IMG/VR virus record: IMGVR_UViG_3300024999_000030
Span: 62,001 to 126,000 of that record
DNA: 64,000 nucleotides
Reading direction: 5' to 3' (one strand)
The notes under the pieces were generated by a model that was not told the origin of the DNA, did no database searches, and worked only from the letters and a program-made list of their open reading frames with translations. Within the stretch, counting starts at the first letter, position 1. The number at the start of each line of letters is the position of its first letter. This document shows, piece by piece, positions 19,422 through 63,581 of the stretch. The translations under genes were made by a program, and so were the position numbers.

Positions 19422-19433
19422 CTATTAATAAAA
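19422..19433 (+). promoter_or_regulatory. Candidate late promoter CTATTAATAAAA
   Basis: Intergenic. The TATTAATA core ends 26 nt before the GTG of the gp25-like gene. The same motif recurs at 37361 and 63572. Confidence 0.55.
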
Positions 19434-19456
19434 GCTGATAATCTGGAGGGATTTAC

Positions 19457-19933
19457 GTGTCTTTTGACCTTCGAATCGAAAACGGAGACATATCTTTTCA
19501 AAATAGCAAGGTGGAGACGGTAACTAATGAGGATAAGCTAGTTCAGTCCCTCGTTAGAATTCTCTTAACCCCGCTTGGAGAAGTTAGGCTTCGTCCATAT
19601 TATGGAACCAATCTTGGTGGCATTATTGCTCGCCCCCTTATGCCAGATTTTATTTTTATCACAAAAATTGAAGATTCTGTGAAAGAAGCTTTAGAGTTTT
19701 TAATGGCTCAACAGTCCACACAGGCTAGATATCAATATGTGAGTCCCGGAGAAGAGATACGAGAAATTTTAAGTGTTATGGCTGAAAAATCTTTATCTGA
19801 TCCTAGACAAATTAATGTAGGTATTGCTATTAGAGCTGGTAGTGGGGACGTTGTAGCTAAAACCTTTACCATTTCCCCTGGAGCTATAGTACAGGTAACC
19901 GGTGGTGTGGTAACCGAGCGAGGTGGGTTCTAA
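19457..19933 (+). CDS. Baseplate wedge gp25-like protein
   Basis: MSFDLRIENGDI...KLVQSLVRILLTPLGEVRLRPYYGTNL is the typical gp25/GpW pattern. GGAGG RBS; immediately upstream of baseplate J. Confidence 0.8.
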   Translation: MSFDLRIENGDISFQNSKVETVTNEDKLVQSLVRILLTPLGEVRLRPYYGTNLGGIIARPLMPDFIFITKIEDSVKEALEFLMAQQSTQARYQYVSPGEEIREILSVMAEKSLSDPRQINVGIAIRAGSGDVVAKTFTISPGAIVQVTGGVVTERGGF

Positions 19934-22900
19934 TGATTAAAAATTATCAGCAGATAGTGGCTGATTTAAAAGATAAGCTCCGTAGTCGCATTCAGGGAGC
20001 AGATTTAACTGACGGCTCGGTTATTAAGGAATTATTAGATTCTTATGCCGATGAGCTTTCTGGTTTATATGCTGAAGTCAAAAATATGCAAAATCTGCAG
20101 TCAGTAAAAACAGTATTTGGTTCTGATTTAGATAAACTTGCTTCTAATTATTCCATGCAAAGAAAACAAGCACAAACCGCTGGTGGTGTGGTGTTATTAA
20201 CTCGTTCATTGTTATCCCCTGATGAGCGCATAATAGTGCGTTCTGGATCATTGGTATATACCTCTTCCAGTTCTATTGCCACTAATGCTCCAGTCTCTTT
20301 TAGAATTGTGGGTGATGTGGTTATTTCTGGTGCCAATAGAGAGATTTATCGAGCAACAGCAAATCAATATCGTAGTTTTCTAGATGCCAATGGTATTTAC
20401 GATACATATGCAATTGCTGTGTCGGTTACGGCAGTTAATCAGGGATCCACATCCAATGTTGCAAAGGGCTCTATTCGGAAACACGCAATAGCAGCCGTCA
20501 ATAATGTTATTAACTTTGAAACCACTTCTGGTGGAGAAGATTTAGAGTCAGATGATAATTTCAGAAAAAGATTATTATTAGTATTTGCTGGTAGTAATTT
20601 AACCACTATGTTTGGATTGAAATCATTTTTCATGTCCCAACCAACAGTGAGCGACGTTGCTATTATTGGACCAGGCCACCCATTAATGGTCCGAGATGGT
20701 ACGGTTTCCGACGGCGAAACAGTTCTTGTTCCAGGTTCTGGTGGTATGTTGGATGTTTATATCGCAGGTCGAAAACTAGAACGTGGAGAAGAAAATTTCA
20801 TATTTAGTCCCGTAGCGGGCGTGCCTATTACAGATTCTTCTAATGATTATGTGTTGGGTCGTTCTTCCTATATTGATAGATTTTCTGGATTACTAAGAGA
20901 GTTAGATGCCAGCAATAGAAAGTTATTAGCTTCAGACCCACAATTATATGTGCAAGCGCCCATAGCCGACTTAGTTAGCGTTGTTGGTTCTCAGTCTGGA
21001 GCGTTTGAAAAGGATGTCAATTACACACTTATTAAAGATGCTGATAGTGATTCTCCATCCGCCTTTGCTAATAGTAGTTTTGGTTTTGATAGAATTAGAT
21101 GGCTCAAACAAGAAAAAAGTATTATAGCTGAAGACGTTACAAGAACTCGTGACTCTTCTTATGATTTCACTCAATATACCGATTTGACATCTATTGATGA
21201 TATTCATTCACAATTACCGGTTAATCAAGAGCCAGCGATTGTATCTTCTTCCATTGTAAATGAAAATGGAACATTAGTGGCCACTGTGTATACTAGACAT
21301 ATTCCGGTGTCATCAGTTAGTGCGGTGGAGAATTATGATACTGGTGAAAGATATATTATTGAAAGCTATGATTCAAGCGGTAAAATTAAGATTTCTGGTA
21401 GAGCCTTACCTACCACAGATGCCACTGTTTTAATTTCATATACTTGGGATAAATATTTTGATCCGTCTTTTGATTATTCATTAATTGATAATATGATTTA
21501 TTGGACAGATTCATCTGCACCTTTATTGCAAGTTGGTAAAGATGACATTATCAATGGTGTGGTTTTATCAGATACTATCAACATAAGTGGTGTTACTGGT
21601 TCCATTACAGTGCCCAATGAAATAAATTTAACCGTTTCTGCTCGTGGTACGGGTAAACGTATTGCCGTTGTTCAGGGAATTAGTATTACTACGGTAATGA
21701 ATCAATATCAGCGCGTGACATCAAATATTTCTCTCGATGACACTGGAGCGGCTTATGTTTTTAGAGTAATTCCGCCCACTGATGCTTCTGGAATTATTGG
21801 CGGCGTATATGAAAGAGATGTGGTGACGTCATATGTATCATTGGCTCGTAGGGGAGATACTATTGGGCGTGTCTATCCTGAAACAAATCCTTTGTCGCTA
21901 AATGGCACCTTCACTTATCCAGAACCAGTTGTAATGTATAGTAATGACACTATTCAGGAAAATAAAATTGTATCATATTCAACAACTAGCAATGGCCTAC
22001 AGTTATTAATTTCAACTACAGATATAACACAACCACGCCCAGGAGATGATATATATTTATCATTCCTTTGGGAAGTGCGACATCCAGTTTCATCCACATC
22101 CAACACTACACGCCACGCTGATGAGACCGGTACGATTAGAACATATTATGTGTTAGGAACAACGGAAGGGCTCACTGAAGACACAATAAGAAATGTGAAT
22201 AATCCAATGTATGTTAATCCTAATTCTGGTTTAGCTAATATTGGTAACTATGATAGATTGATTTTTGCTGGAGCGATTAGTGGCTCCAACAATGCTCAAT
22301 ATACATATAAGAGATTTGCCACAATAGATAATATTGCAGTATCCACAGATAATTATTCTTTATTTACTGGTGTAACTGTAAGCTTAGTGTCTTCTCCAAT
22401 TTCCTCCACGCGCTATAAAGTAAATTATACATATTCCTCTCCAAAACCCGGTGAGCGCATTTTAACAACATACTTTTATAATAAATCGGTTGGAGACTTA
22501 ACTAAAACTATAGAAAGCGAGCGCATTATTAATACTGACATATTGGTGAAAGCCGCTATCGAAGTCCCATTATTTGTGGCTGTGTCAATAGTGGCCGCAA
22601 GTGGCAGTAATCCAGTTACTATGCAATCTGCTGTATCGAATGCCCTTCTTACCATTATGAATACAGAAAGTTTAGGCGGGACTTTACAACCTTCATATGT
22701 CTCATCTGAACTTTTTAGATTAGTATCGGGCCTCATAAATGTTAATTTTACTAGATTTAGTAAACAAACGGAAACAGGTACAAAAGAAATATTATTAAAA
22801 GATAATGAATATTATAGTTTGAGTTCGTCTAATGCAACAGTCGTCGTGGCTGTGGGCCGTGAAACTGTTGGTAAAGATTATTTTACCGAAGGAGCCACCT

Positions 22901-22989
22901 CCCCAACGCTACAACCTACGGGGCAGGCTTCGACATGTGAGAATGCTCGAAACGTTATTTATAATCCCAAAGAGTGTTCTCCTAGATAA
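19933..22989 (+). CDS. Baseplate J / gp6-like wedge protein (enlarged, 1018 aa)
   Basis: DLTDGSVIKELLD, GSDLDKLASNYSMQRKQAQTAGGVV, AVNQGSTSNV...I and TSGGEDLESDDNFRKR are baseplate J motifs. Confidence 0.85.
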   Translation: MIKNYQQIVADLKDKLRSRIQGADLTDGSVIKELLDSYADELSGLYAEVKNMQNLQSVKTVFGSDLDKLASNYSMQRKQAQTAGGVVLLTRSLLSPDERIIVRSGSLVYTSSSSIATNAPVSFRIVGDVVISGANREIYRATANQYRSFLDANGIYDTYAIAVSVTAVNQGSTSNVAKGSIRKHAIAAVNNVINFETTSGGEDLESDDNFRKRLLLVFAGSNLTTMFGLKSFFMSQPTVSDVAIIGPGHPLMVRDGTVSDGETVLVPGSGGMLDVYIAGRKLERGEENFIFSPVAGVPITDSSNDYVLGRSSYIDRFSGLLRELDASNRKLLASDPQLYVQAPIADLVSVVGSQSGAFEKDVNYTLIKDADSDSPSAFANSSFGFDRIRWLKQEKSIIAEDVTRTRDSSYDFTQYTDLTSIDDIHSQLPVNQEPAIVSSSIVNENGTLVATVYTRHIPVSSVSAVENYDTGERYIIESYDSSGKIKISGRALPTTDATVLISYTWDKYFDPSFDYSLIDNMIYWTDSSAPLLQVGKDDIINGVVLSDTINISGVTGSITVPNEINLTVSARGTGKRIAVVQGISITTVMNQYQRVTSNISLDDTGAAYVFRVIPPTDASGIIGGVYERDVVTSYVSLARRGDTIGRVYPETNPLSLNGTFTYPEPVVMYSNDTIQENKIVSYSTTSNGLQLLISTTDITQPRPGDDIYLSFLWEVRHPVSSTSNTTRHADETGTIRTYYVLGTTEGLTEDTIRNVNNPMYVNPNSGLANIGNYDRLIFAGAISGSNNAQYTYKRFATIDNIAVSTDNYSLFTGVTVSLVSSPISSTRYKVNYTYSSPKPGERILTTYFYNKSVGDLTKTIESERIINTDILVKAAIEVPLFVAVSIVAASGSNPVTMQSAVSNALLTIMNTESLGGTLQPSYVSSELFRLVSGLINVNFTRFSKQTETGTKEILLKDNEYYSLSSSNATVVVAVGRETVGKDYFTEGATSPTLQPTGQASTCENARNVIYNPKECSPR

Positions 22990-23010
22990 AAATCCTAGGG
23001 GCGTGGACCA

Positions 23011-26000
23011 ATGAATAAATTACCTGTGAAGCTAATTGCTGTTACAGCAATAGCTTTAGATGAACTGGAGGCGGTATTTAACCAGCCAGTTAATCCCAAC
23101 CTTACCAATGCTAATTTTGTTATTTCCCCACTTTATGGGGTTGGCAATTTAAACATAGTTTCCATTACACAGTCACTAGATAGTTCTGTAACAATTATAA
23201 TACATACAGATACACAAATACCATTTATGCTGTATCGAGTAGTGACTTCTGGTGTGCGTGCTCTCACTAGTAGTGCTATTATAGAAACAAATTCGGTAGA
23301 CAATATAGCTGTATTTGATGGTTTTGCGACTGATAGTGTTATTTTAGATCGAATGATAGATTCTTTGTCTCCTATGTTAGCTAATAAAACTAAGATAGAA
23401 CCCACCACAGGACAAGAGGTAGAAACTTTTACTAGTAAGCTATTTAGGGTTGTGTCCGATGAATTATCCAGAATTGAAGATGAAATTGGAAAAACTGAAG
23501 CAGATTATTTTATTGGTGTTCAAGTTGACTCTGAAGCTGTAACGCGTGGTCGAGGCCACTATGATAAATTAAATAACATAGGCGCAAATGAAATTACAAG
23601 AGTTGCAAAAGAAAAATCTAGTAAAGCAATTATTAAATCTGATACTTCTTCAGTATTTTTTGATGGAGATGTTCAACTTATAACTCAAAGTATTATGGGG
23701 TCGTTAACCGTGTCTCTAACTCCTAGTTCTGGTTATTTGGAGGTGGACGCTCTTAGTCCCTCCTTAATCAATGCTAGTAGATTTATGTTGGGTTTTCCCG
23801 CTCCCCAAGCTGGAGATAAGAGATATATTCGTTTTGTAAATGCTGAAGAAGCCACTATCACAGCTACCCCATATGTTTTAGAGGTCCAATTGGGGCCTAT
23901 TCTTAAAGTGTTGGCTGTAATGGTCCAAACTGGACCAGTTATGGCAATGTACGATTTGTCTAGTTATGCATTGAAGACTAATTTTTATGATGTTGGAAAT
24001 GCTTATGTTGATGTTAAATTAACAGACACCCAATTTAAATTAAGTCCGGTTTTAGGAGTCCCTCCTCCACAAGCTGGAGATAAAGTTTTTGTGGTATATT
24101 CTTATAATAACTCTACTAGAAAAATTCAGGAAAATTTAAATGTTACCGCTGTAGTTGGCTTACCACCTGCTAGAGTCACCAACACCACATTACCAATTAT
24201 AGGTACACCAGATCCAAATTTAGATCCAGTTTTTAATGAAATAGAAATGGAACAATCTTCAGCTTCTGGCGGCGCATTTTTCATTAACAATGTTGGTTTG
24301 TTATCTTATTCTGGAATTAGTAATGCAACTTCTACTAATACCTCTTTAGTCATTATGAAAAAAGAAGTTGATGTTTTAATTCGTATAGACCATGATTTAA
24401 CTTTAACTGAACTTTCAGATGGTAGATTTGTTTGTTTAAATCCATTTCAACGTGAAGTATCTTGGTCTGTGGTGCGTACTTTAAGCTGGGGCGAGTATAT
24501 GGTAAATTATAGAAATACTCAATCCACTTCAGCTCAAACAGAAATAGCTATTGCACAATTTGATGCAGGGTCGCCCAATGATACACTTTTAGCGGCAAGA
24601 TTGACCGCTTTTCCACAAGTGATATACGTAAGTTATTTGAGATTAGCTACATATGAAGAAGATATTGACTATAGCGTTATTTTAGGTAACGCTAATGTAT
24701 ATGCAAACAACCCATTGATGACTGGCGCGATTGCTTTGCCATCATCTGATTCTAGTCAAATATCAGAAGGCCAGATTGTAAATATAGCCTATCAATATGA
24801 AGATGTTTTTGTTGAGGGCCGGGATTATAATTTATTTGCAAATGTTGAGGAATGTTATGAAAGGGTTGGTTCCTCTATGTTTATAGATGAAGATGGTAAA
24901 TTTAACATTAAAACACAACATAGTCCCATAGAAGAAGTAAACAAAGTATTTAGTGAAGGTACTGGTATCGATTATACAGTTAATCATGTTTATGATGATC
25001 GTATAATTGTAAATGAACCGATTAGTGTTGAAAATGTAATAGAGGTAGTAACATTTAAAGACGTTACAGATGTTATAGAATTAAAGGATGTTGCTGGAGC
25101 CCTTTCACTCTCCCATGCAATGTTACTTAATGAAGCAAAGACAACTATAGGTGGAACTGTATATGATTCAGTATCATTACAAAAAGTTGATAAAATTGCG
25201 ATTAGGACGGCATATCTTAGTGGAACCGATGGGTTTTTATTACAATTCCAAAATAAATTAATTTCCGAAGGTGAAACCGCAGACAGATTTACCGGTATTG
25301 ATACCACTAGTGTATTGTATCCATTTACAATTGATCCATATTTATTAACGGACGCTTATCTTCAAAATCAAGGTCTTTTTGAAGATGTTTTTAATAAAAA
25401 TGATTGTATAAATATTACCACGTTTGTAGGAATCAATGAAGAGCCAACATGTTTTTATGGTACTATTGATTCCTCTGTTTCATTTGAGCCTACAGTTTGC
25501 GTTCATGATACTGGAGCGGTTTGTGACGTTACTGGTACGGCATTTAGTCCCATTGACGGGTATAATGTTGATGCTAATTTATATAAATCTCATTGTAAGT
25601 CTCAGTCTTGTTTTAAATATACATCAGTATTTCATAAAGAAGTACCGTTTATTGATGGTAAAACTGAATTTTATCGGCGTGTTATTGGAGAGGATGGCAT
25701 TCCCCTTGTAGATAAAAATGGACAATATATTTTTACCAGACGTGAAGCTCCAGGGGCTTATTCTATTGATTATATAAACGGGGTTGTTCATGTGGCAATT
25801 GATTCTTGGGCACCGGTCGTGGGTCTTCAGTCTCAAATTGTAGCTAGATATACCACGGCAGCACTTCAAGCTAGACATCAAAATGTCTTAAATGTTAATT
25901 ATGTACAAAAACAAGCAATTTCATCTTCTGCTGGTCAAAACATTCAAAAGACTGCATTAAACTATCTTAAGGTAGATCACATTGATAACGATACAATTTA

Positions 26001-37360: not shown

Positions 37361-37372
37361 CTATTAATAAAA
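37361..37372 (+). promoter_or_regulatory. Candidate late promoter CTATTAATAAAA
   Basis: Intergenic, 2 nt after the upstream stop. The core ends 25 nt before the ATG at 37395. Confidence 0.55.
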
Positions 37373-37394: not shown

Positions 37395-40300
37395 ATGAGC
37401 GATACTGTATTGAAACCAACATTTTACAGCGGGCAGAATATATATCGAGATAATTTACAGAGAATTGTATCTTATGATTCCTCTAAACGCACGGCATTAA
37501 TTCTGTCTATGTTTAATAATGGCGTCGTAAATCCAACTCCATATGATTTGAGTGCTATGCGAGTTGTTGTTGATTCCTATCGCAACAATAGTTGTTATTT
37601 AGACTTTCAATCTTCATCTCAGGCTAATAATCCAATCACTATGTCAGCATCTGGCGATCCTCGTATTTTATATGCTCAAAAATTTTATGCTAGAAGTAAC
37701 AATATTCAAAAAGTTAGACTATGGATGTTAGTGGATGTACCCCCAGGCACACAGTTTGGTGAAATTTTTGTAGAAATTAGGGCTCTTGTTGGTTCCGATT
37801 GTACATCCAGCAATAGCTGTAATTGCAATTCAACATTACCCACCGGTGCCAGCCCCCTCATCACTGAACCAGCTTCTCAGGTTTTAGCTAGACGGGTGTT
37901 AGACCACAATACCATTAATAATTCTTTTCCGTATATTGATGTGAGTTTTGCCACAGAGCCACTTGTTTCTAATCTTGATGACAGATCTTTGATGATTCCT
38001 GGTCAATACTATGCTATTGTTATTGGGCGTAATTATTCTACAACCGGAACTTTACAAATTCATGGTAATTTTGGTAATAATCTAGCTAACTTAGAAAGCT
38101 ATGTTACTAAATTTGATCCAACAACCGGACTATGGACAAACTATGAAGGTGATTCAATAGCTTATCAAATTTTTTCTAATACTGTAGAGCTTCTCCCTGG
38201 GGATGGTATTGTTAGTGGTGCATCTATTAACAACCCAACGTACGTAGAAGACTCTGTTGGTAATACAGTGAGATATCATCTAGGAAACTTAGATTTAGCT
38301 CACGTTAAAAACATTGTGAGTGCTGGTGCTGTCGATCAGAATGGCGATGGGCGTAATATGGTTATTGCTCGTATTCGTGAAGTTGAAATGGAATATCAAC
38401 CTAATCCTAGAACGGGTAATCCAAATGCTACTGCAACGGCTGAGGTTATTGAGGCCTCTATTACCACTGAGAGGCTCTGGTCCGAAATGTCCAGTACCGA
38501 TCAAGCCGCTTGGTTGATATTAGCCTATGTTACCGATGAAAACACTAAAACAATTAAGGGATTATATGAACCACCCTGCGATATTAATGCTGCCGCAATT
38601 GCGGGTAATTGGTCTCCAGGTTTAATCAATATTGAAGACGCTAGGGTGTTTGTTCCTCACGCACAGGCCCTTAAATATAGCCTATTAGATGAGCCACCCG
38701 CTAGAGCCATTTCCACTTCTTATAACACTAATTTAATTATTCCTCAAGCTGATTCAACATTGGCATTAGCTTCAGTCTATATTAACACTGAGTCTGGGGC
38801 CCCGAGCAGTGTTTTTAAAACCGGATGTGTAGAGCGCAATCAATTGTCGGTTTTTGATAGTGCCTTTGGAATGACACTTACCACACCACATATGGGTAAG
38901 TATTTATATTATGCGGATGATGCGGGTACTCTTAAAAAATTAAATATCATTCCACCAATGGTTCAAAGTTCTATTGCTAGTGCCGACATTACCTCTGTTC
39001 CAAGGACATTAAATGCCTCTACAACCATTGGGGCCTGCGTGAACGCCAACATGGGTCTACGCGTTAGATTACAGTGGACACCTCCCTCGGACCCGACTTC
39101 TTATCGTGGGTTAGTTATTGTTAGGTCTACGGAAGACTATCCACGCTCTATCGACGATGGAGTAATTATTGCTGTATCTGAAAAAACATTTACTACTTTA
39201 GATGGACGAGTTTATAATTTTGATCCAGTCGGACAAGCAAATCCATGTTGTAATGCTGATAATCCAGAAGCGGGTATTATAGGAAAACGTCGTGGATTAA
39301 ATTCCCCACTTCCAGAATTATCTATGGAATTGGTTAGTGCGATGTCTGGTACTCTTAATAGTTTAAACGATATCGTAGAATATTCCATAATTCCTGGTAC
39401 GGAATTTAATATTAACGTGTCAGCCTTTAATCTTAGTTCCGCTATTCTTCATCCTCGTTTTGATGTTGATATTATATATGCGGGCGGTTCAATAAATCTT
39501 TTGAGGGATTATCAAGCAGTAAATGCTTCCACAATGTATGTGAGTTCTTCAGCTATTAATGATATTATTTTACCTGTTACAATTCCAACTACAATTAACA
39601 ATAGCTCTTTTCCAACCGGATATACATACTTAATGATTAGAGTATATGACGGATTTGTGTCAACTCATCCTCAAATTGGTACTCTTACATTAATTTTGAA
39701 AAATGAAACAGGTGAAAGTTTTAATTCTGGTCTTACTGCTATAGCTGCTCCACTATATGAAAACGACCAAGCTGTGGAAGATTATATTGCAGATTCAACA
39801 ACATTATTATCTGTTTCAGCAATGAGCTTTTTAAATATTTCAGCTATACCGTTTGGTAGATTATCACTTAAATCTCAATGGATGGCTAATTATTACAATG
39901 GCACTACCAATCAAATTGTACCCACAGATTCTATTAATTTAACTCCTTTAGAAACTGTAAATGGATCAGAAATTACAATGGAGACTTTGTTGGATTATGT
40001 TGGAGCTAATGCTTCTGTGGTTCCAGTTTCCATATCTTCTGACACATTTAGATTACAATTTATTGATATTGTTGGCAGTTCCATCGCCATAGGAAATAGC
40101 ACGACAGCCGCTCCTTCAGAATTATTTTTATCTGTTGTAGATGAAACTTCTGAGGCGGATATTAAACCAATTGTGGCATATTATAATCAGGATTTATATT
40201 TAGTTCCACGTCAACAGCTTGTTTTAAATCAAGAGTGCTCTTGCTATGTAGATGCTTACTCTGGAACGGCGTATTCTGCCGGTTTTGTCGGTTGTGAGCG

Positions 40301-40967
40301 GGGATACAATGCTGCAGCTTGTAATAACGGTATGTCCTATAATTTAATTTATTATTATACTGTTTTTACATATAACGATGCTGGACATTTTAGTTATGTT
40401 GACAGTTGCGCTCGCGCTGAATATGGTATTGGTAATGCTTTACCTCCTGGCCCAGTATGTCAACTTGCTATTGTTCCTCAAGCTAGTGGTAATCATGGCC
40501 CACTGTATGATAGCATCTCTTTATCGTGGGTAAATCCAGACGAATCTTCACTTTATGGAGTTAGAATTTACGTTTCTAAATATCGCTATGCTACAAACTT
40601 CGTAGAGCCATTCGATGCCAGCGATCCAATGTATATTTTATATGACTCCGTGTTTACCCCTAATTTAAATGCTATTGTTAATGTTGGTCCGGGTACAAGT
40701 TCAGCTATTATTGATGGGGTGGATAATTTTATAGCAGATCCCGACCATCCCGAACCCGATCCATATTATGGACACACTCAAGGTTATCGTGGTCTTTATA
40801 AGCTTTCTTCTGGCGGAGACGCTGTATTTACTGAATCCTCTACGTCTTCGGCGGTCCAATTTGAGAATGGAGTTATATATCATTATACTGTGTTCACATA
40901 TGATGTAAATGGCAATTACAATACCCCAACTTGTGTGGATAGGGGTCAAGTAAGCTATGCTTTATAA
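37395..40967 (+). CDS. Large virion structural protein with FN3-like domains (1190 aa)
   Basis: N-terminal KPTFYSGQNIYRDNL resembles the start of phage baseplate/fibre proteins. FN3-like strands LQWTPP, ISLSWVNP, YYYTVFTYND and YHYTVFTYDVNGNY. Confidence 0.6.
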   Translation: MSDTVLKPTFYSGQNIYRDNLQRIVSYDSSKRTALILSMFNNGVVNPTPYDLSAMRVVVDSYRNNSCYLDFQSSSQANNPITMSASGDPRILYAQKFYARSNNIQKVRLWMLVDVPPGTQFGEIFVEIRALVGSDCTSSNSCNCNSTLPTGASPLITEPASQVLARRVLDHNTINNSFPYIDVSFATEPLVSNLDDRSLMIPGQYYAIVIGRNYSTTGTLQIHGNFGNNLANLESYVTKFDPTTGLWTNYEGDSIAYQIFSNTVELLPGDGIVSGASINNPTYVEDSVGNTVRYHLGNLDLAHVKNIVSAGAVDQNGDGRNMVIARIREVEMEYQPNPRTGNPNATATAEVIEASITTERLWSEMSSTDQAAWLILAYVTDENTKTIKGLYEPPCDINAAAIAGNWSPGLINIEDARVFVPHAQALKYSLLDEPPARAISTSYNTNLIIPQADSTLALASVYINTESGAPSSVFKTGCVERNQLSVFDSAFGMTLTTPHMGKYLYYADDAGTLKKLNIIPPMVQSSIASADITSVPRTLNASTTIGACVNANMGLRVRLQWTPPSDPTSYRGLVIVRSTEDYPRSIDDGVIIAVSEKTFTTLDGRVYNFDPVGQANPCCNADNPEAGIIGKRRGLNSPLPELSMELVSAMSGTLNSLNDIVEYSIIPGTEFNINVSAFNLSSAILHPRFDVDIIYAGGSINLLRDYQAVNASTMYVSSSAINDIILPVTIPTTINNSSFPTGYTYLMIRVYDGFVSTHPQIGTLTLILKNETGESFNSGLTAIAAPLYENDQAVEDYIADSTTLLSVSAMSFLNISAIPFGRLSLKSQWMANYYNGTTNQIVPTDSINLTPLETVNGSEITMETLLDYVGANASVVPVSISSDTFRLQFIDIVGSSIAIGNSTTAAPSELFLSVVDETSEADIKPIVAYYNQDLYLVPRQQLVLNQECSCYVDAYSGTAYSAGFVGCERGYNAAACNNGMSYNLIYYYTVFTYNDAGHFSYVDSCARAEYGIGNALPPGPVCQLAIVPQASGNHGPLYDSISLSWVNPDESSLYGVRIYVSKYRYATNFVEPFDASDPMYILYDSVFTPNLNAIVNVGPGTSSAIIDGVDNFIADPDHPEPDPYYGHTQGYRGLYKLSSGGDAVFTESSTSSAVQFENGVIYHYTVFTYDVNGNYNTPTCVDRGQVSYAL

Positions 40968-48763: not shown

Positions 48764-49738
48764 ATGAAAAAGGCATTAGTTACTGGTATTTATGGACAAG
48801 ATGGTGGTTTTTTAGCAAAACAGCTACTTCAAGAGAACTATGAAGTGTGGGGTGTAAAGCGCCGCTCAGCCTCATCTATTCCATGGCGGCTGGAAGCACT
48901 TGGTATCTTATCTCACCCAAATCTCCATATTATTGAGGGAGATGTAACAGATCCAATTTCCATGTTAGACTGTGTAAAACGCTCTCAACCAGATGAAGTT
49001 TATAATACGGCAGCCATGAGTCATGTGGGAACCTCATTTAAACAGCCTCTTGCCACTGCCCAAATTGATGGGTTGGGAGTTCTAAATATATTAGAGGCTA
49101 TTCGTACATTAGCTCCTGAAGCTAGATTTGTACAGTGTTCCACCTCGGAGCTTTATGGTAATTTACCCCCGGAGCAACAATCTCTAGGCGTATATCATCC
49201 ACGTAGTCCATATGGGGTGGCAAAGCTTTTTGGTTTTTGGACTACAGTTAATTATCGTGAAACATATAATATTTTTGCTTGCAATTCCATTTGCTATAAT
49301 CACGAATCAGCTTTACGCGGCGAAGACTTTGTTACTAGAAAAATTACACTTGGCTTAGCTGATATTGTAGCTGGTAAAAGCAAGGTGATTAAGTTGGGAA
49401 ATATTGATGCTCGTCGAGATTGGCAACATGCTAAAGATGCGTGTCGAGCAATGATTATGATGGCCCGCGCGGATGTAGCGGATGATTTTGTTGTTGCTAC
49501 TGGAGAATCTCATTCTGTACGAGAGTTTATTCAATTGGCGGTGAAGAAAGCTGGCTTAGGAGATGATTGTGAACGTTTTATTGAAATCGATCCACAGTTT
49601 TATCGTCCTGCTGAGGTCCCAGATTTGAAAGGGAATCCAGATAAAATTATGAAAACTTTGGGATGGAAACCTATTACATCTTACGAACAGTTAGTCGAGG
49701 AAATGGTTAATTATGATGTCTTTGGGAAGAAGCCTTGA
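48764..49738 (+). CDS. gmd: GDP-mannose 4,6-dehydratase
   Basis: KKALVTGIYGQDG, AAMSHVGTSF, STSELYG, PRSPYGVAK (YxxxK), NHESALRGEDFVTRKIT, LGNIDARRDW and YRPAEV. Confidence 0.95.
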   Translation: MKKALVTGIYGQDGGFLAKQLLQENYEVWGVKRRSASSIPWRLEALGILSHPNLHIIEGDVTDPISMLDCVKRSQPDEVYNTAAMSHVGTSFKQPLATAQIDGLGVLNILEAIRTLAPEARFVQCSTSELYGNLPPEQQSLGVYHPRSPYGVAKLFGFWTTVNYRETYNIFACNSICYNHESALRGEDFVTRKITLGLADIVAGKSKVIKLGNIDARRDWQHAKDACRAMIMMARADVADDFVVATGESHSVREFIQLAVKKAGLGDDCERFIEIDPQFYRPAEVPDLKGNPDKIMKTLGWKPITSYEQLVEEMVNYDVFGKKP

Positions 49739-49763
49739 CTTTTTCTAACTTTAAAATTATATT
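49735..49763 (+). promoter_or_regulatory. Sigma70-like promoter TTGACT-17-TATATT upstream of the tubulin gene
   Basis: The -35 overlaps the gmd stop codon; exact 17-bp spacer. Confidence 0.7.
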
Positions 49764-51298: not shown

Positions 51299-51322
51299 GG
51301 CGCCCGCAAGGGCGCCTTTTTT
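51299..51322 (+). terminator. Rho-independent terminator
   Basis: GGCGCCC-GCAA-GGGCGCC followed by T6 (7-bp stem, GNRA loop). Confidence 0.92.
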
Positions 51323-51334: not shown

Positions 51335-51344
51335 CTATTAATGA
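51335..51344 (+). promoter_or_regulatory. Candidate late promoter variant CTATTAATGA
   Basis: Directly after the terminator. The context ctattaat(g)ataattgtta resembles 63572. About 30 nt before the ATG at 51374. Confidence 0.4.
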
Positions 51345-51373: not shown

Positions 51374-51858
51374 ATGACAAAAATAATTTTTCTTTTTGGA
51401 AAAGAGGCTAAAAAATGTACTAAATGTCAACAAGATAAGTTATTATCAGAATTTCCAAAAAACAAAAGGGAAAAGAATAAAATATTATTAAGAAAGAAAG
51501 CACAAATACGCAGAAAAGCTAGAGCCCTACAAGACCCAGAATATAGATTGCTTCTTTGCTGTAGGAGCCGAATTAGCGATGCTATTAGAAGAAATAGGGG
51601 TTTTAGTGGAAAAAATCAAACCACTAAACAGCTAATAGGATGTTCATTATTACAACTTAGGCAACATATTGAAAGTAAGTGGCAACCGGGAATGACTTGG
51701 GAAAATTATGGTATCCGAGGGTGGCACATAGATCATATTAAACCATGTGCTTCGTTTATTCTAACGGACGAAAAACAATTACAACAATGTTTTTTCATTA
51801 TACAAATCTTCAGCCCTTGTGGTGGAGAGATAATTTAACGAAAGGAGCGAAAACATGA
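51374..51858 (+). pseudogene. Degenerate/frameshifted HNH endonuclease-like gene
   Basis: Has KKCTKC, LIGCS...HIE and MTWENYG..GWHIDHIKPCASF. After a T6 run (51790-51795) the -1 frame continues HYTNLQPLWWRDNLTKG and stops at TGA 51856-58, overlapping the amidase ATG. Confidence 0.8.
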
Positions 51859-52496
51859 AATTTAATACTGATTATTCCGCAACAACCACGGATTATTATC
51901 TGGTGGAAACAGTAAAACAAGGCATAACACTTCATTATACTGCTGGCAGCACTGCTTCTGGAGCCATTAGCACGTTATGTCAACAAGATATGGTATGTGT
52001 GCCTTTTGTGGTGGATAAAGATGGCACTGTCTATCAACTTTTTAATCCAAAATATTATGCTTTTCATTTGGGGATCCGTGGAGCAGCAGAAGGTTATAAA
52101 AAAGGACATTTTGATAAAAAATTTCTAAGTGTGGAAATCGTCAATGAGGGACCATTAAAAAAAGTTGGTTCAGATTATTTATGGTGGCCTAAAAATTGGG
52201 GAGCTAAATATACAGGAAAAGTAGTTAATTATTCTTTTCGTGGTTTTGATTATCATGCGGCATTTCCAGAGGTTCAAATCCAGGCTGTTTGTGAATTAAT
52301 AAAACATCTTTGTACTGAGTTTAATATTTCTAAAAGTTTAGTGCCAAAAGATAAACGTGAATTATTAGATTTAGATTATATGGATACCTTTGAGGGGATA
52401 TGTTCGCATGTTAATTTCAGGTGGGACAAATGGGACATTCCAGGTGAACCAGTCTTTCCGTGGGATAGGCTACAAAAGTATTTAGAAGACAAATGA
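51855..52496 (+). CDS. N-acetylmuramoyl-L-alanine amidase (Amidase_2), probable endolysin
   Basis: ITLHYTAG, FVVDKDGTVYQ, SVEIVNEG and ICSHVNFRWDKWD (zinc ligands H/H/D plus catalytic E). Confidence 0.88.
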   Translation: MKFNTDYSATTTDYYLVETVKQGITLHYTAGSTASGAISTLCQQDMVCVPFVVDKDGTVYQLFNPKYYAFHLGIRGAAEGYKKGHFDKKFLSVEIVNEGPLKKVGSDYLWWPKNWGAKYTGKVVNYSFRGFDYHAAFPEVQIQAVCELIKHLCTEFNISKSLVPKDKRELLDLDYMDTFEGICSHVNFRWDKWDIPGEPVFPWDRLQKYLEDK

Positions 52497-53398
52497 TTGA
52501 AATTACAGATCAGATAACCGGCATATATGAAAAAATTACAATAATCAATGAATTGCATTGGTCGCATAAACTTATGCATATTAATGAAGCTTGGGCTAGG
52601 GCAACAGGTAAAGGCGTTAAAATAGGTATAGTAGATACTGGTTGCGACATTCATCATCCAGATTTAAATGGCGCTATTGTTGGATGTCATAACTTTTCTC
52701 AATCATCGGGGCAATGCGAAGATATGCATGGGCATGGCACACACATAGCGGGTATTATAGCGGCTAAAATTACTGGCTCCGGTGTTTCGGGCGTAGCTCA
52801 TGGAGCTAGTTTATATATCGCAAGAGCTATAGATAATTCTGGAGTAGGAAATCCAGCAAACATAGCTAGGGCTATTGAAGCTTGTATAGATGCTGGATGT
52901 GATGTTATTAATTTATCTCTTGGGTGTCCAGAAGAATACATTCCAATGTCTCGGGCTATTCAACGAGCTACTGAAAAAAATATTATTGTTGTAGCTGCAG
53001 CAGGCAATTGTGGAGATAATAACGTTTCAACGGTAGAAGAACAGTGGCCAGCTAGATTACCATTTGTTATTTCTGTAGCTGCTATTAATAAAAAACTAAT
53101 TAACGCTTCATGGTCAGCTTCTGGTGATATTGAGTTTTCTGCTCCAGGAGTTGATATTTTATCTTGTTATCCAGGTGGTAGGTATGCTACTATGAGTGGC
53201 ACGAGTCAGGCCTGCCCGTTTATAACTGGGGCGTGTGCTCTAATGAAAGAAATAAAACGCGATATAAATAGAGAGCAAATTGTTAAATTGCTGTCGCAGT
53301 ATTCTATGTCTATAGGACATCAAGCCAGCTTTGGGGCCGGGGTGGTTAACGTTGTTGCTGCTTTAGAGTCCCTAGAGGGTATGTTGAAGCGAGGTTAA
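52493..53398 (+). CDS. Subtilisin-family (S8) serine protease with no signal peptide
   Basis: Catalytic triad IVDTG / HGTHIAG / GTSQACP, oxyanion AAGN. Confidence 0.95.
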   Translation: MIEITDQITGIYEKITIINELHWSHKLMHINEAWARATGKGVKIGIVDTGCDIHHPDLNGAIVGCHNFSQSSGQCEDMHGHGTHIAGIIAAKITGSGVSGVAHGASLYIARAIDNSGVGNPANIARAIEACIDAGCDVINLSLGCPEEYIPMSRAIQRATEKNIIVVAAAGNCGDNNVSTVEEQWPARLPFVISVAAINKKLINASWSASGDIEFSAPGVDILSCYPGGRYATMSGTSQACPFITGACALMKEIKRDINREQIVKLLSQYSMSIGHQASFGAGVVNVVAALESLEGMLKRG

Positions 53399-54401: not shown

Positions 54402-54430
54402 TTGACTTTTATCTTTAATAGTTTTATATT
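54402..54430 (+). promoter_or_regulatory. Sigma70-like promoter TTGACT-17-TATATT upstream of the replication operon
   Basis: Starts immediately after the upstream stop; exact 17-bp spacer. Confidence 0.7.
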
Positions 54431-54434
54431 ATAC

Positions 54435-54460: not shown

Positions 54461-54474
54461 TATTGGAGACAAAT

Positions 54475-59521: not shown

Positions 59522-59617
59522 GTAATATATGTAGTTTGAAGCTCATTGAGAGAACATATTTTGAACACGGAAAGTCACTATTAATACGAATATTTTAGAT
59601 ATCAAATTGGAAAAATC

Positions 59618-59635
59618 GGGGCCGATAACGGCCCC
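59618..59635. other. GC-rich hairpin in the nrdJ leader
   Basis: GGGGCCG-ATAA-CGGCCCC, with no + strand U-tract. Confidence 0.75.
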
Positions 59636-59677
59636 ATCGCCATTAACCAACATAGAGTAGGCAAGGAGAAGAGTGAA

Positions 59678-62647
59678 ATGAACAAGTTAAGTTTATCTCG
59701 AAAAATATTGTCAGATATTACGGTATATGCTAAATATGCTAAATTTATTCCTAAATTAAAACGTAGAGAGACGTGGGAAGAAATTGTAACACGTAATATG
59801 GAAATGCATATAAGAAAATTTCCAAAATTAAAAACAGAAATTGAAGATGCTTTTAAATTAGTATATAGTAAAAAAGTTGTACCTTCGATGAGGTCAATGC
59901 AGTTTGCTGGGAAACCCATAGAGCTGTCTCCTAATCGCGGCTACAATTGTTCTTTTGTTGCTATTGATGATTTTCACGCTTTTTCCGAGACCATGTTTTT
60001 ATTGTTGGGTGGGTCAGGTGTTGGGTTTAGTGTCCAGCGGCACCATGTAGAACAACTGCCAGTAATATATAAGCCAATTAAATCACGGCGCTTTTTGGTC
60101 GGCGACTCAATTGAAGGGTGGGCAGACGCTGTTAAGGCGCTTTTCCGTGCTTATATGTGCGGAAAAACTTTACCAGAATATGATTTTAGAGATATTCGTC
60201 CGAAGGGTGCTCGTCTTATTACATCTGGGGGTAAGGCCCCAGGACCGGAACCTCTAAAAGACTGTTTACATAATATTCAAAAAATTTTAGATAGAAAAGT
60301 GGGTGGATCTAAGTTAACCACATTAGAATGTCATGATATTATGTGTTATATTGCTGATGCTGTTTTAGCTGGGGGAATTCGGCGTGCTGCCATGATTAGT
60401 TTATTTTCTTTTGACGATGAGGACATGCTTACTTGTAAATATGGCAATTGGTATGAATTAAATCCTCAACGTGCAAGAGCTAATAATTCTGTAGTTATTT
60501 TACGTCATCGGATCAAAGAAAAGGAATTTAAACAACTTTGGAAAAAAGTGCAAATGTCAAAAAGTGGAGAGCCAGGTATTTTCTTTACAAATAATAAAGA
60601 AATGGGTATCAATCCTTGTTTATCGGGAGACACTTGGATACATACTACGCAAGGAGCTAAACAAGTTAACGAACTGGTGAATAAAAAATTCACGGCGATT
60701 GTGAATGGAAAACATTTTGATTCTACGGAGTCTGGTTTTTTTAGCACTGGTGTTAAATCGTTGCTATCACTTGAAACAAACAATGGAAACAATTTAAAAT
60801 TGACAAATAATCATAAACTACTTAAGGTTCTTAAACGAACCTCTAAAAAAATTTATACGGATTGGGTAGAAGCTAATCAACTAACCGTTGGAGACGAGAT
60901 TTTGTTGTCTGTTCATGATGGCGTAGCAAAATTTGGTGAAAACAACCCAGGCGATTTTGATCGCGGCTGGTTACTCGGAGAGCTTCTGGGAGATGGTTGT
61001 TTTTCGGGGCCATCCTCCGCTTGTTTAGACTTTTGGGGGCCCTCTGCTCAACATATGTCTTCATTAGCTTATAATAGAATTAAAGGCGTTTTAGAAACTC
61101 GCTCAGATTTCGGTGTTATAGATCAATATCAAAAAGACAAATTACGTATTCGTTGTGTTGCGGTAGCTAATTTAGCAAAACAATATAATATTACGCAAAA
61201 GACAAAGTTATTAACTCCTGCAATTGAAGCTGAGAGTTATGATTTTATTGCTGGATGTTTGAGAGGATTGTTTGATGCGGATGGCACTGTAATAGGAAAT
61301 CAGATTAAGGGAGTATCTATTCGATTGGGACAAGTAAGTTTGAATAATTTACAATGTGCACAAAGAATGTTATCCCGATTGGGAATAGTTTCTAAAATTT
61401 ATAAAAATCGTCACCCCGCTGAATTCAGATATATGCCGGATGGAAAAGGAGGAACAAAAAAATATTGGTGCCAATCTATGAATGAATTAGTAATTTCTGG
61501 ACACAATATGCATGTGTTTCAGTCTGTAGTGGGATTTGATGAACCAGCAAAAGCCACCAAACTTGCGAATTTATTAGGAACATATAAACGAAAGCTTAAT
61601 CGCGAACGTGGTTTAACGACCATCACAAAAATTATTCCCATTGGAGAGGCCGAGGTGTTTGACGCAACTATACCAGGGATTCATGAATTTTGTGCTAACG
61701 GTCTGCGGGCTCATAATTGTTCTGAAATTTCTCTTAAATCGGCACAAATGTGTAACTTAACAGAAGTGAACGTATCCGATGTTCATAGCCAGGAAGACCT
61801 CAATGAACGCTGTCGTGTTGGTGCCTTTATTGGTACATTGCAAGCGAGCTATACTGAGTTTCATTATCTCAGAGATCTTTGGCAAAAAAATTGTGAGAAG
61901 GATGCCTTGCTTGGTGTCGGTATGACTGGAATTTGTTCTGGTGGTATATTAAATTTAAATCTTGAAATGGCAGCAGATATTTGTGTAAAAGAAAATGAGC
62001 GCACCGCTGCTCTTTTAGGTATTAATAAAGCCGCTAGGGTAACTTGCATTAAACCCAGTGGTACCACAAGTTTAGTGTTTGGTTGTTCATCTGGAATTCA
62101 TGAATGGCACGATGAATATTATATTAGAAGAATGCGTATTGGTAAAAATGAAGAATTATACAAATATTTAAGTGAACATTGTCCAGATATTTTAGAAGAT
62201 GATTTTTTTAAGCCTACTATTCAAGCGGTAATTAGTATTCCACAAAAGGCCCCAGAGGGAGCTATTTTAAGAAAACATAGTGATCCAATTAAACTTTTAG
62301 AGCGCGTAAAAAAGTTTTCTCAAGAATGGGTTGTACCTGGACATAACGACGGTGATAACAGACATAATGTTTCGGTTACAGTTAGCTTAAAGGATGATGA
62401 GTATCAAATTACTGGCGAGTGGTTATGGAAAAATAGGGACCATTATACTGGTATTACAGTGCTCCCGCTTGATGATCATTCGTATATGCAAATGCCCTTT
62501 GAATCATGTACTGAAGAGGTGTATGATAAAATGTTACGTAAAATTAAAGATATTGATTTGTCTAAGGTTGTTGAGATAGACGACCACACCACGTTAACAG
62601 AACAGGCGGCATGTGCTGGGGGAGCCTGCACTATTACCAGAGTATAA
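59678..62647 (+). CDS. nrdJ: Class II (B12-dependent) ribonucleotide reductase, monomeric RTPR type, intein-interrupted
   Basis: RETWEE, PSMRSMQ, NCSF, GGSGVGFS, GGIRRAAMI, NP|C-SEI, TCIKPSGT and C-terminal CAGGAC. Confidence 0.92.
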   Translation: MNKLSLSRKILSDITVYAKYAKFIPKLKRRETWEEIVTRNMEMHIRKFPKLKTEIEDAFKLVYSKKVVPSMRSMQFAGKPIELSPNRGYNCSFVAIDDFHAFSETMFLLLGGSGVGFSVQRHHVEQLPVIYKPIKSRRFLVGDSIEGWADAVKALFRAYMCGKTLPEYDFRDIRPKGARLITSGGKAPGPEPLKDCLHNIQKILDRKVGGSKLTTLECHDIMCYIADAVLAGGIRRAAMISLFSFDDEDMLTCKYGNWYELNPQRARANNSVVILRHRIKEKEFKQLWKKVQMSKSGEPGIFFTNNKEMGINPCLSGDTWIHTTQGAKQVNELVNKKFTAIVNGKHFDSTESGFFSTGVKSLLSLETNNGNNLKLTNNHKLLKVLKRTSKKIYTDWVEANQLTVGDEILLSVHDGVAKFGENNPGDFDRGWLLGELLGDGCFSGPSSACLDFWGPSAQHMSSLAYNRIKGVLETRSDFGVIDQYQKDKLRIRCVAVANLAKQYNITQKTKLLTPAIEAESYDFIAGCLRGLFDADGTVIGNQIKGVSIRLGQVSLNNLQCAQRMLSRLGIVSKIYKNRHPAEFRYMPDGKGGTKKYWCQSMNELVISGHNMHVFQSVVGFDEPAKATKLANLLGTYKRKLNRERGLTTITKIIPIGEAEVFDATIPGIHEFCANGLRAHNCSEISLKSAQMCNLTEVNVSDVHSQEDLNERCRVGAFIGTLQASYTEFHYLRDLWQKNCEKDALLGVGMTGICSGGILNLNLEMAADICVKENERTAALLGINKAARVTCIKPSGTTSLVFGCSSGIHEWHDEYYIRRMRIGKNEELYKYLSEHCPDILEDDFFKPTIQAVISIPQKAPEGAILRKHSDPIKLLERVKKFSQEWVVPGHNDGDNRHNVSVTVSLKDDEYQITGEWLWKNRDHYTGITVLPLDDHSYMQMPFESCTEEVYDKMLRKIKDIDLSKVVEIDDHTTLTEQAACAGGACTITRV
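60617..61717 (+). mobile_element. Full-length intein with LAGLIDADG homing endonuclease (367 aa)
   Basis: Starts CLSGDTWI, has LLGELLGDG and LRGLFDADG, ends EVFD...ANGLRAHN. The +1 residue is the active-site Cys of the NPCxE motif. Confidence 0.95.
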
Positions 62648-62676
62648 TTGAAAAAAACCTATTTTAGAGTTATATT
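62648..62676 (+). promoter_or_regulatory. Sigma70-like promoter TTGAAA-17-TATATT
   Basis: Begins immediately after the nrdJ stop; followed by an AAGGAG RBS. Confidence 0.65.
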
Positions 62677-62693
62677 TACATAAGGAGAGCAAA

Positions 62694-63369: not shown

Positions 63370-63523
63370 TTCAAAGGATATTGAAACATTATATAATATT
63401 ATGATTAAGTATCAAGATTTTTTTATAGATTTAGCTAAAATCGGCGGCACAGAGCATGTACATGACTTCAACACGGTAGCTAAAATTATAAATGATATGT
63501 TGGAGCAGGTAGACAGTCATTAA
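63344..63523 (+). CDS. 59-aa hypothetical protein
   Basis: GGAG RBS; MADSTIKINSKDIETLYN...; ends before the terminator. Confidence 0.55.
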   Translation: MADSTIKINSKDIETLYNIMIKYQDFFIDLAKIGGTEHVHDFNTVAKIINDMLEQVDSH

Positions 63524-63543
63524 AAATAATGTTATATTTCTAA

Positions 63544-63570
63544 AGCTGTTCAGAAATGAACAGCTCTTTT
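63544..63570 (+). terminator. Probable intrinsic terminator
   Basis: AGCTGTTC-AGAAAT-GAACAGCT then CTTTT. Confidence 0.6.
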
Positions 63571-63571
63571 C

Positions 63572-63581
63572 CTATTAATAA
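63572..63581 (+). promoter_or_regulatory. Candidate late promoter CTATTAATAA
   Basis: Directly after the terminator; the core ends 25 nt before the ATG at 63606. Confidence 0.55.

What the first reader, a model, noticed from the sequence alone, without database searches (positions are those of the whole stretch)
19422..63581. Recurrent intergenic CTATTAATA at fixed spacing: candidate phage late promoter one base from T4's TATAAATA
Seen: CTATTAATA at 19422, 37361 and 63572. The TATTAATA core ends 26, 25 and 25 nt before start codons. A variant CTATTAATGA lies at 51335, about 30 nt before its start. Two copies sit 2-3 nt after stop codons and two directly after terminators. There is no -35 partner. 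The genes downstream are structural or lytic where function is recognisable. Known: T4 late promoters are a lone TATAAATA read by gp55. Caveat: at this AT content 1-2 chance copies per window are expected (one lies in a CDS at 53082), but only a small fraction of one in intergenic DNA.
Basis: partly seen in the sequence, partly recalled or inferred. Interest (0 to 1): 0.65.

Follow-up and report, generated by a model that had tools for sequence, protein, structure and literature searches.

The report
Conserved promoter motif of huge phages
The 9-base signal CTATTAATA sits just upstream of virion, lysis and some other genes in this uncultivated 333-kb phage and its relatives. It is most likely a promoter read with the help of a phage-made factor: a new consensus for a familiar kind of early-to-late switch.

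Summary
The window is part of a 332,730-bp jumbo myovirus from IMG/VR that is distantly related to Bacillus phage G.

- **Window:** 4 of 5 CTATTAATA copies lie in the 1-2% of the window that is non-coding.
- **Genome:** TATTAATA is the commonest intergenic 8-mer (25-27 of 54 copies non-coding). CTATTAAT is the most enriched 8-mer upstream of genes.
- **Anatomy:** the copies point the way the downstream gene points. They are never closer than 24 nt to a start codon, often follow terminators and have no -35 partner.
- **Second class:** TTGAC[TA]-N17-TATATT (host sigma-A type) precedes the DNA polymerase, a recombinase/primase block and tRNA clusters. The motif precedes the capsid operon, baseplate, tail and lysis genes.
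- **Conservation:** at about 72% DNA identity, 7 of 7 alignable intergenic copies are kept against 1 of 9 coding copies. In relatives with 34-60% GC, CTA[TC][TC]AATA is overwhelmingly intergenic.
- **Machinery:** no phage RNA polymerase, gp55-family sigma or gp45 clamp was found. The phage encodes a full sigma-70-type factor (272 aa), whose own gene carries the motif, and a region-4-only HTH protein.

Verdict: a phage-specific middle/late promoter that resembles T4's late promoter in sequence anatomy (function untested) but does not belong to T4's system. Timing and transcript starts remain untested.

The parts
19422..19430 (+). Motif copy CTATTAATA, 3 nt after the stop of the 600-aa ORF and 26 nt before the GTG of the baseplate gene at 19457
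   Evidence: Kept exactly in a relative with about 72% DNA identity while the flanks change.
37361..37369 (+). Motif copy CTATTAATA, 2 nt after a stop and 25 nt before the ATG of the 1190-aa ORF at 37395
   Evidence: Conserved in relatives L027 and L029.
51335..51343 (+). Variant copy CTATTAATG directly after a terminator, 30 nt before the ATG at 51374
   Evidence: The variant ending in G is less enriched genome-wide (4 of 12 copies intergenic), so this copy is less certain.
59578..59586 (+).
   Evidence: Conserved in the relative. The leader contains a G+C-rich hairpin at 59617-59636.
63572..63580 (+). Motif copy directly after a terminator, 25 nt before the ATG of a 95-aa ORF at 63606
   Evidence: The core is kept in the relative; the flanking C becomes A.
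53082..53090 (+). Copy inside the CDS 52493-53398; function uncertain
   Evidence: It is the only one of 9 coding copies kept in the relative. It could be an internal promoter or simply conserved codons.
51299..51316 (+). Terminator-like hairpin with a T run just before the variant copy
63544..63565 (+). Terminator-like hairpin with a T run just before the copy at 63572
49735..49763 (+). Contrasting promoter class: TTGACT-N17-TATATT (host sigma-A type)
   Evidence: One of 28 intergenic copies genome-wide, all with a 17-nt spacer.
54402..54430 (+). Contrasting promoter class: TTGACT-N17-TATATT (host sigma-A type)
19457..19933 (+). Downstream gene: small baseplate / sheath-initiator-like protein, followed by the baseplate-J-like gene at 19933-22989
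   Evidence: phrog_2669 at 5.8e-9, a sub-threshold PF10934 match, and phrog_6 / PF04865 for the next gene.
37395..40967 (+). Downstream gene: 1190-aa protein with no family match, followed by a glycosyltransferase
51374..51838 (+). Downstream gene: endonuclease VII-like, followed by an amidase (endolysin) at 51855-52496
   Evidence: phrog_1035 at 2e-9 and PF01510 at 2.4e-14.
59678..62647 (+). Downstream gene: ribonucleotide reductase carrying an intein with a LAGLIDADG domain
   Evidence: phrog_367 at 6.9e-123, PF14890 and PF14528.
63606..63893 (+). Downstream gene: 95-aa protein with no family match

Best explanation
CTATTAATA (invariant core TATTAATA, usually preceded by C) is the core element of a phage-specific promoter class. 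It acts like a -10-region element without a -35 partner. Host RNA polymerase most likely reads it once it carries a phage-encoded specificity factor. The best candidate is the 272-aa sigma-70-family protein at genome 270838-271656. That gene carries the motif 24 nt upstream of its own start, which suggests positive feedback. The region-4-only HTH protein encoded in the recombinase/primase block may be a helper or the first trigger. Sigma-A-type promoters (TTGAC[TA]-N17-TATATT) sit in front of replication genes and tRNA clusters and would act early. The motif sits in front of capsid, baseplate, tail, lysis and some other units and would act later. Transcripts are predicted to begin about 6-9 nt after the core. 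That would make the recurrent 24-26 nt spacing the shortest leader that still holds a ribosome-binding site. Shown: the motif's enrichment, orientation, placement and conservation; the second promoter class; the absence of a detectable phage polymerase; the presence of the two sigma-like genes. Inferred: that it is a promoter at all, when it fires, where transcripts start, and which protein reads it.
For: TATTAATA is the commonest intergenic 8-mer, with 25-27 of 54 copies in the 7.6-10.8% of the genome that is non-coding (binomial P about 1e-13 to 1e-14). CTATTAAT is the most enriched 8-mer in the sense strand at -90 to -8 of genes (21 against 3.3 expected, P 5e-11). The exact core is needed: 46% of exact copies are intergenic against 0-27% for one-mismatch variants. 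Copies before minus-strand genes are in minus orientation, in divergent intergenic regions that no upstream gene on that strand transcribes into (12229, 155968, 179782). No copy lies closer than 24 nt to a start codon, and six lie at 24-26 nt. Several follow terminators. Against a relative with about 72% DNA identity, 7 of 7 alignable intergenic copies are kept and 1 of 9 coding copies (Fisher P 0.0014). Contigs whose sigma is only 39-42% identical (GC 43-45%) all carry the motif upstream of that sigma gene, and one carries it after SbcC as here. In 7 distant loci (GC 34-60%), 20 of 21 CTA[TC][TC]AATA copies are intergenic, and in each of the four loci that include the capsid gene one lies 59-97 nt upstream of the capsid operon. 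In 80 further loci (960 kb), 108 copies are intergenic and 81 coding, against 9 and 97 for the reversed control word. Gene partition: the motif precedes the capsid operon, a virion protein, a tail peptidase, a tail-fibre cluster and the baseplate; the sigma-A type precedes the DNA polymerase, the recombinase/primase block and tRNAs. No phage RNA polymerase was found. The sigma spans regions 2-4.
Against: The core is a perfect palindrome, as an operator for a dimeric protein would be. The candidate sigma has a region 4, yet no -35 element is conserved. If that sigma reads its own promoter, its first expression is unexplained, because no sigma-A-type promoter was found ahead of its gene block. 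The motif also precedes a reductase, an AAA ATPase, an Hsp20-like gene and the sigma gene, so it is not strictly 'late'. The 272-aa sigma was not found in more distant, mostly fragmentary relatives that still show the motif family. My gene calls are a simple longest-ORF and ribosome-binding-site heuristic.
Confidence: 0.68

Rival explanations
1. The palindromic core TATTAATA is an operator for a dimeric DNA-binding protein, for instance the region-4-only HTH protein at about 301027-301617. The protein would activate nearby weak promoters, and would shut off early promoters when its site lies in their spacer.
For: The core is its own reverse complement. Four sigma-A-type promoters carry CTATTAAT[AG] in their spacer at a fixed register, 4-5 nt after the -35. 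The HTH protein is encoded in a block that follows a sigma-A-type promoter, so it would be made early, and it is conserved in more distant relatives.
Against: The flanks are asymmetric and follow the gene's direction: C before the core in 18 of 23 copies, and A/T then T at +9 after it. An AT-only 8-mer is a palindrome 1 time in 16 by chance. No conserved -10 hexamer that a host holoenzyme could use lies at a fixed distance from the core.
Confidence: 0.17
2. The motif is just a strong -10-like element read by the host's primary sigma without phage help.
For: It is AT-rich and sits where a -10 would sit. When the base after the core is T, the word TAATAT resembles a -10 hexamer.
Against: No register inside TATTAATA has both an A at hexamer position 2 and a T at position 6; this is seen directly in the sequence, and the importance of those two positions is recalled from established knowledge. 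The base after the core is not a conserved T (36% clade-wide). There is no TG extension and no -35. The same genome has a very uniform sigma-A-type class with a different -10, TATATT. A copy that overlaps such a -10 kept TATATT but lost the motif in the relative (genome 127125).
Confidence: 0.08
3. The signal acts in RNA, for example as a cleavage site between cistrons, rather than in DNA.
For: It is strand-oriented and lies between genes, often just after stop codons.
Against: Several copies lie directly after terminators, where little upstream RNA would arrive. Three lie in divergent intergenic regions with no upstream gene on that strand. Some lie in the spacers of sigma-A-type promoters, upstream of any transcript start.
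Confidence: 0.04
4. The copies are chance matches in AT-rich spacer DNA.
For: The raw window count is not significant.
Against: Placement, orientation, genome-wide enrichment and conservation across 34-60% GC all argue against it. Non-coding DNA is not more AT-rich than coding DNA.
Confidence: 0.01

Closest known systems
T4-type late promoter (TATAAATA at -13 to -6, read by gp55 with gp33 and the gp45 clamp; PMC1524935)
   Same: A lone, nearly invariant 8-bp AT-only word with no -35. It lies close upstream of late (virion, lysis) genes and often after terminators. The core differs from T4's at one position.
   Different: No gp55-family sigma and no gp45-type clamp were detected. The candidate reader is a full sigma with regions 2-4. 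T4's own word is only mildly enriched here. The phage is not T4-like: its closest isolate is Bacillus phage G, with 54% capsid identity.
Sigma cascades of Bacillus phages such as SPO1 (gp28, then gp33/gp34); recalled from general knowledge, not tested here
   Same: Host polymerase is redirected by phage-encoded sigma-family proteins from host-type early promoters to phage-specific ones. Strong ribosome-binding sites and sigma-A-like early promoters would fit a Gram-positive-type host, though no host was identified.
   Different: SPO1 middle and late promoters are bipartite (-35 and -10); this motif is a single block. Only one phage-specific class was found here.
Host sigma-A/sigma-70 promoters in the same genome (TTGAC[TA]-N17-TATATT)
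   Same: Both classes lie upstream of genes and after terminators. In four places the two are superimposed.
   Different: A different word, a mandatory -35 with an exact 17-nt spacer, and different gene sets: replication genes and tRNAs against virion and lysis genes.
Bacillus phage G, the closest cultured relative
   Same: Related capsid (54%) and baseplate proteins, and it also encodes annotated sigma factors.
   Different: In its first 50 kb, which include the capsid and portal genes, only 1 of 8 TATTAATA copies is intergenic, and no such word stands out upstream of genes. The motif belongs to a metagenomic subclade, not to phage G.

Membership tests
T4-type late transcription system | Lone 8-bp AT-rich -10-region word without a -35 | tested here: met
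   The core is invariant and the alignments of 23-24 copies show no upstream conservation.
T4-type late transcription system | Consensus TATAAATA | tested here: not met
   The enriched word is TATTAATA (46% intergenic). TATAAATA is at 8 of 56 copies.
T4-type late transcription system | gp55-family sigma (about 185 aa, no region 4) | tested here: not met
   phrog_234 is the gp55 family (T4 gp55 scores 2.9e-69). The genome's only match to it is the 272-aa sigma, at 2.5e-4 in the protein scan and 1.3e-5 in the genome search. That protein fits general sigma-70 better and has a region 4. BLASTP against T4 gp55 gives E 0.012.
T4-type late transcription system | gp45-type sliding clamp as activator | tested here: not met
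   PF09116 finds nothing in the genome at E up to 1. A very divergent clamp cannot be excluded.
T4-type late transcription system | gp33 co-activator | not tested
   I did not look for a gp33 family model.
T4-type late transcription system | Transcripts start about 6 nt after the word, late in infection | not testable with these tools
The phage is uncultivated.
Sigma-70/sigma-A promoter | -35 TTGACA, a 16-18 nt spacer and a -10 hexamer with A at position 2 and T at position 6 | tested here: not met
   No -35. No register in the core gives nAnnnT (seen directly in the sequence). A separate clean sigma-A-type class exists.
Promoter of a phage-encoded RNA polymerase | A phage RNA polymerase gene is present | tested here: not met
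   PF00562, PF00623 and PF00940 find nothing (the PF00940 control did not ring either). No DxDGD-type motif occurs in any called ORF. The giant ORFs without matches (3988, 2098 and 1957 aa) leave a small doubt.
Operator of a dimeric HTH regulator | Dyad-symmetric site, symmetric also in its flanks, with position independent of gene direction | tested here: inconclusive
   The core is a palindrome, but the flanks are asymmetric and follow the gene's direction.

The most novel reading that the evidence does not exclude
A large, uncultivated clade of huge phages (capsid family with more than 1,600 metagenomic members, GC 34-60%) may share an undescribed way of switching host polymerase to late genes. 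In this reading a single palindromic 8-bp word is read without a -35, by a full-length phage sigma or with a region-4-only HTH partner. The word could fire in both directions, and it is superimposed on host-type promoters wherever expression is needed throughout infection (tRNA clusters). That mechanism would differ from both T4's gp55/gp33/clamp system and SPO1's bipartite promoters.
Probability: 0.25. Interest if true: 0.7.

Novelty: new variant of a known kind. Interest (0 to 1): 0.55.

Why it matters
Huge phages related to phage G are abundant in metagenomes, but almost nothing is known about how they time gene expression.

- **Annotation:** a sequence-defined promoter class, next to a clean host-type class, gives a way to split these genomes into temporal modules. 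In this genome most open reading frames tested have no family match.
- **Candidate switch:** it points to two candidate switch proteins, the 272-aa sigma and the region-4-only HTH protein.
- **Bench tests:** it yields simple assays, namely polymerase plus sigma on a 9-bp motif.
- **Evolution:** a T4-like promoter anatomy appears here without T4's proteins. That bears on how lone -10-type promoters arise.

Tried and rejected
- **RNA evidence:** No transcript data were obtained.
- **Close relatives among isolates:** megablast of 8 kb against the phage collection found nothing. TerL and baseplate proteins reach isolates only at 22-28% identity.
- **Third promoter class:** dyad and k-mer counts on the 170 intergenic regions lacking both classes gave nothing convincing.
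- **A -10 hexamer 6 nt after the core:** T, A, T at +7 to +9 are enriched, but the positions that define a -10 are not. I read them as the start-site context instead.
- **Upstream ORFs to explain G at +16:** none fit consistently.
- **Linking motif variants to the 272-aa sigma:**
  - A single-sequence search of five relatives found nothing.
  - A profile search of 17 more gave one weak hit.
  - Most of these records are fragments (4-63% complete; the five ranged from 18 to 100%), so this says little.
  - Three loci were not held for whole-record searches.
- **Other sigmas in relatives:** sigma-like genes of about 210 aa exist in five relatives, with no motif directly upstream.
- **Literature:** full-text searches for the words returned no relevant paper.
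- **Rfam:** no family matched in the window.
- **Giant ORFs as hidden polymerases:** no PHROG, Pfam or PDB match for the 3988-aa ORF, and no catalytic-loop motif in any called ORF.
Full report
**What the window is.** The window is bases 62001-126000 of a single 332,730-bp IMG/VR virus record, rated 100% complete by CheckV, with 38% GC.
- Genes are packed on the plus strand. They include baseplate, tail-fibre-like, amidase and reductase genes and several giant ORFs.
- Elsewhere the genome encodes the major head protein (6241-7221), large terminase, portal, a GroEL, a topoisomerase II, a DNA polymerase and a UvsX-like recombinase.
- It also carries about 29 tRNA genes.
- The closest cultured relative is Bacillus phage G, with 54% capsid identity and 28% baseplate identity.
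- Genome coordinates below equal window coordinates plus 62000.

**Checking the observation.**
- One intergenic copy at 59578, upstream of the ribonucleotide reductase gene, was missed.
- The raw count of 5 against 2.04 expected is not significant.
- The placement is significant: 4 of the 5 copies lie in the 1.3-1.9% of the window that is non-coding (P about 1e-7).
- Non-coding DNA has the same GC content as the genome.

**Genome-wide tests.**
- *Most common intergenic word.* With no prior motif, TATTAATA is the most frequent 8-mer in intergenic DNA.
- *Most enriched upstream word.* CTATTAAT is the most enriched 8-mer in the sense strand at -90 to -8 of genes: 21 against 3.3 expected, P 5e-11.
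- *Non-coding share.* Of 54 TATTAATA copies, 25-27 are non-coding (P about 1e-13 to 1e-14).
- *Specificity.* One-mismatch variants are 0-27% intergenic against 46% for the exact core.
- *Flank.* The base before the core is C in 18 of 23 aligned copies; A is the commonest exception.
- *No -35.* Nothing is conserved upstream of the core.
- *Distance to starts.* The gap from core to start codon is never below 24 nt. It clusters at 24-26 nt in six copies and otherwise runs to about 100 nt.
- *Orientation.* Copies before minus-strand genes are in minus orientation. They lie in divergent intergenic regions with no upstream gene on that strand, which argues for a promoter rather than an RNA-level signal.

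**A second, contrasting class.**
- TTGAC[TA]-N17-TATATT occurs 28 times in intergenic DNA, always with a 17-nt spacer. Two of these are in the window, at 49735 and 54402.
- This class precedes the DNA polymerase, a block with the recombinase, primase and an HTH protein, small-ORF regions on both strands and tRNA clusters.
- The motif precedes different genes:
  - the capsid operon (5437);
  - a virion structural protein (58541);
  - a tail peptidase (60326);
  - a tail-fibre/collar cluster (40053);
  - the baseplate genes (81422);
  - a weakly spanin-like gene and a weakly hub-like gene;
  - in variant form, the endonuclease VII and amidase pair.
- It also precedes a sigma gene, the reductase, an AAA ATPase and an Hsp20-like gene.
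- The split fits early against middle/late expression. That timing is an inference from gene content.

**Conservation in close relatives.** Contigs of a relative with about 72% DNA identity cover 78-133 kb and 236-308 kb of this genome.
- All 7 alignable intergenic copies keep the core while their flanks change.
- Only 1 of 9 coding copies is kept, the one at window 53082 (Fisher P 0.0014).
- A copy that is really the tail of a sigma-A-type -10 (genome 127125) kept TATATT but lost the motif.

**Conservation in distant relatives.**
- Three contigs whose sigma is 39-42% identical (GC 43-45%) all have CTATTAATA upstream of that sigma gene, at 30, 86 and 119 nt. One also has it right after SbcC, as here.
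- The capsid protein has more than 1,600 metagenomic relatives.
- In seven loci with 34-60% GC, 20 of 21 CTA[TC][TC]AATA copies are intergenic. In each of the four loci that include the capsid gene, one lies 59-97 nt before the capsid operon. The 60%-GC locus has three CTATCAATA copies.
- In 80 further loci (960 kb, 5.8% non-coding) the family is 108 intergenic to 81 coding. The reversed control word is 9 to 97.
- 26 of 50 loci of at least 10 kb have two or more intergenic copies.
- The motif is not universal. In only 9 of 60 loci does it lie within 1.3 kb upstream of the capsid gene.
- Phage G does not show it in its first 50 kb.

**Extended anatomy.**
- After the core, T at +9 is found in 19 of 23 copies here and in 66% of 108 clade-wide copies.
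- Clade-wide, A at +8 is at 56% and T at +7 at 51%. G is enriched at +16 to +19.
- I read T-A-T as the start-site context: a pyrimidine at -1 and A at +1, about 8 nt after the core.
- I read the G run as the ribosome-binding site of the shortest leaders. This would explain the 24-26 nt spacing. It is inference, not observation.

**Which machinery.**
- No multisubunit or T7-like polymerase domain was found, and no catalytic-loop motif occurs in any called ORF.
- Two sigma-related genes exist.
  - *The 272-aa protein* aligns with RpoD across regions 2-4 (PDB 6wmr, E 6e-10). It matches a general sigma family (phrog_351) at 5.6e-12 and the gp55 family (phrog_234) only at 2.5e-4.
  - *The shorter protein*, of about 196 aa from its likely start, has only a region-4 HTH. 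It lies at the end of the recombinase/primase block, 5 nt before a motif copy.
- No gp45-type clamp was found.
- The system therefore resembles T4's late promoter in anatomy but is not a member of T4's system.
- The sigma gene carries the motif in all five lineages examined. That fits positive feedback, or a cascade started by the early-made HTH protein. The sequence cannot decide between the two.

**Literature.** T4's consensus and factors are taken from PMC1524935. Full-text searches for the motif words found no phage paper.

**Verdict.** This is a real, conserved, oriented signal upstream of genes.
- It is very probably a promoter, at about 0.85.
- It is probably read through a phage-encoded sigma-type factor, at about 0.55-0.7.
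- It is a new consensus and a new protein set for a known kind of switch.

Noticed in passing
L003:10881-10909, L003:17340-17368, L003:7276-7310, L004:12744-12772 (genome 30744-30772): Four sigma-A-type promoters carry CTATTAAT[AG] inside their 17-nt spacer at a fixed register, 4-5 nt after the -35. Three of them sit directly before tRNA genes or clusters, and the fourth before a homing endonuclease next to the capsid gene. This could mean superimposed early and late promoters for continuous expression, or a shut-off site.
   Followed up: partly
L003:14708-14783: A tRNA with anticodon CTA, which would read the TAG stop codon, lies among about 29 phage tRNA genes. TAG ends 31 of 264 genes of at least 100 aa. 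Seven same-frame ORF pairs are separated only by a TAG, including 308688-311195 with 311241-311981, which has a motif copy in the gap. I did not test whether TAG is read through late in infection.
   Followed up: partly
L020:6597-18563 (genome 312597-324563): A 3988-aa ORF immediately upstream of the large terminase has no PHROG, Pfam or PDB match. The ORFs of 2098 and 1957 aa in the window (23011-29307 and 4288-10161) also have no match.
   Followed up: partly
window 59678-62647: The ribonucleotide reductase gene is interrupted by an intein with a LAGLIDADG homing-endonuclease domain (about residues 328-680).
   Followed up: no
window 59617-59636: A G+C-rich hairpin lies in the reductase leader, between the motif copy and the start codon. 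It scores as a terminator only on the minus strand, where no gene is called. Several other motif-proximal leaders begin with hairpins about 14-30 nt after the core (genome 37152, 155968, 301624, 330451).
   Followed up: no
window 53082-53090: The in-CDS copy, with its A-rich 3' flank, is conserved in the 72%-identity relative, unlike eight other coding copies. It may be an internal promoter about 300 nt before the next gene, or just conserved codons.
   Followed up: partly
genome 179782-179789 (L012:17782-17789): This copy lies in a divergent region, 33 nt before a minus-strand gene and 20 nt before a plus-strand tRNA-Met. Because the core is a palindrome, it might serve both directions.
   Followed up: no
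L033:3852-4118, L034:4480-4749, L036:3329-3631: Relatives carry a ribosomal protein S21 gene in the block that holds the sigma, PhoH-like, DnaG-zinc-ribbon and SbcCD genes.
   Followed up: no
L052-L131 (80 loci around capsid genes): Other words are also strongly intergenic across the wider capsid clade, for instance TAAACCTA / AACCTAGA / ACCTAGAC and TAAGTTAA. This suggests that other lineages use different phage-specific signals.
   Followed up: no
L021:12706-15378 (genome 326706-329378): The portal protein (890 aa) matches portal families only over its first 340 or so residues. A stretch at 335-409 matches a family labelled thymidylate synthase, so it may hold an insertion or a fusion.
   Followed up: no
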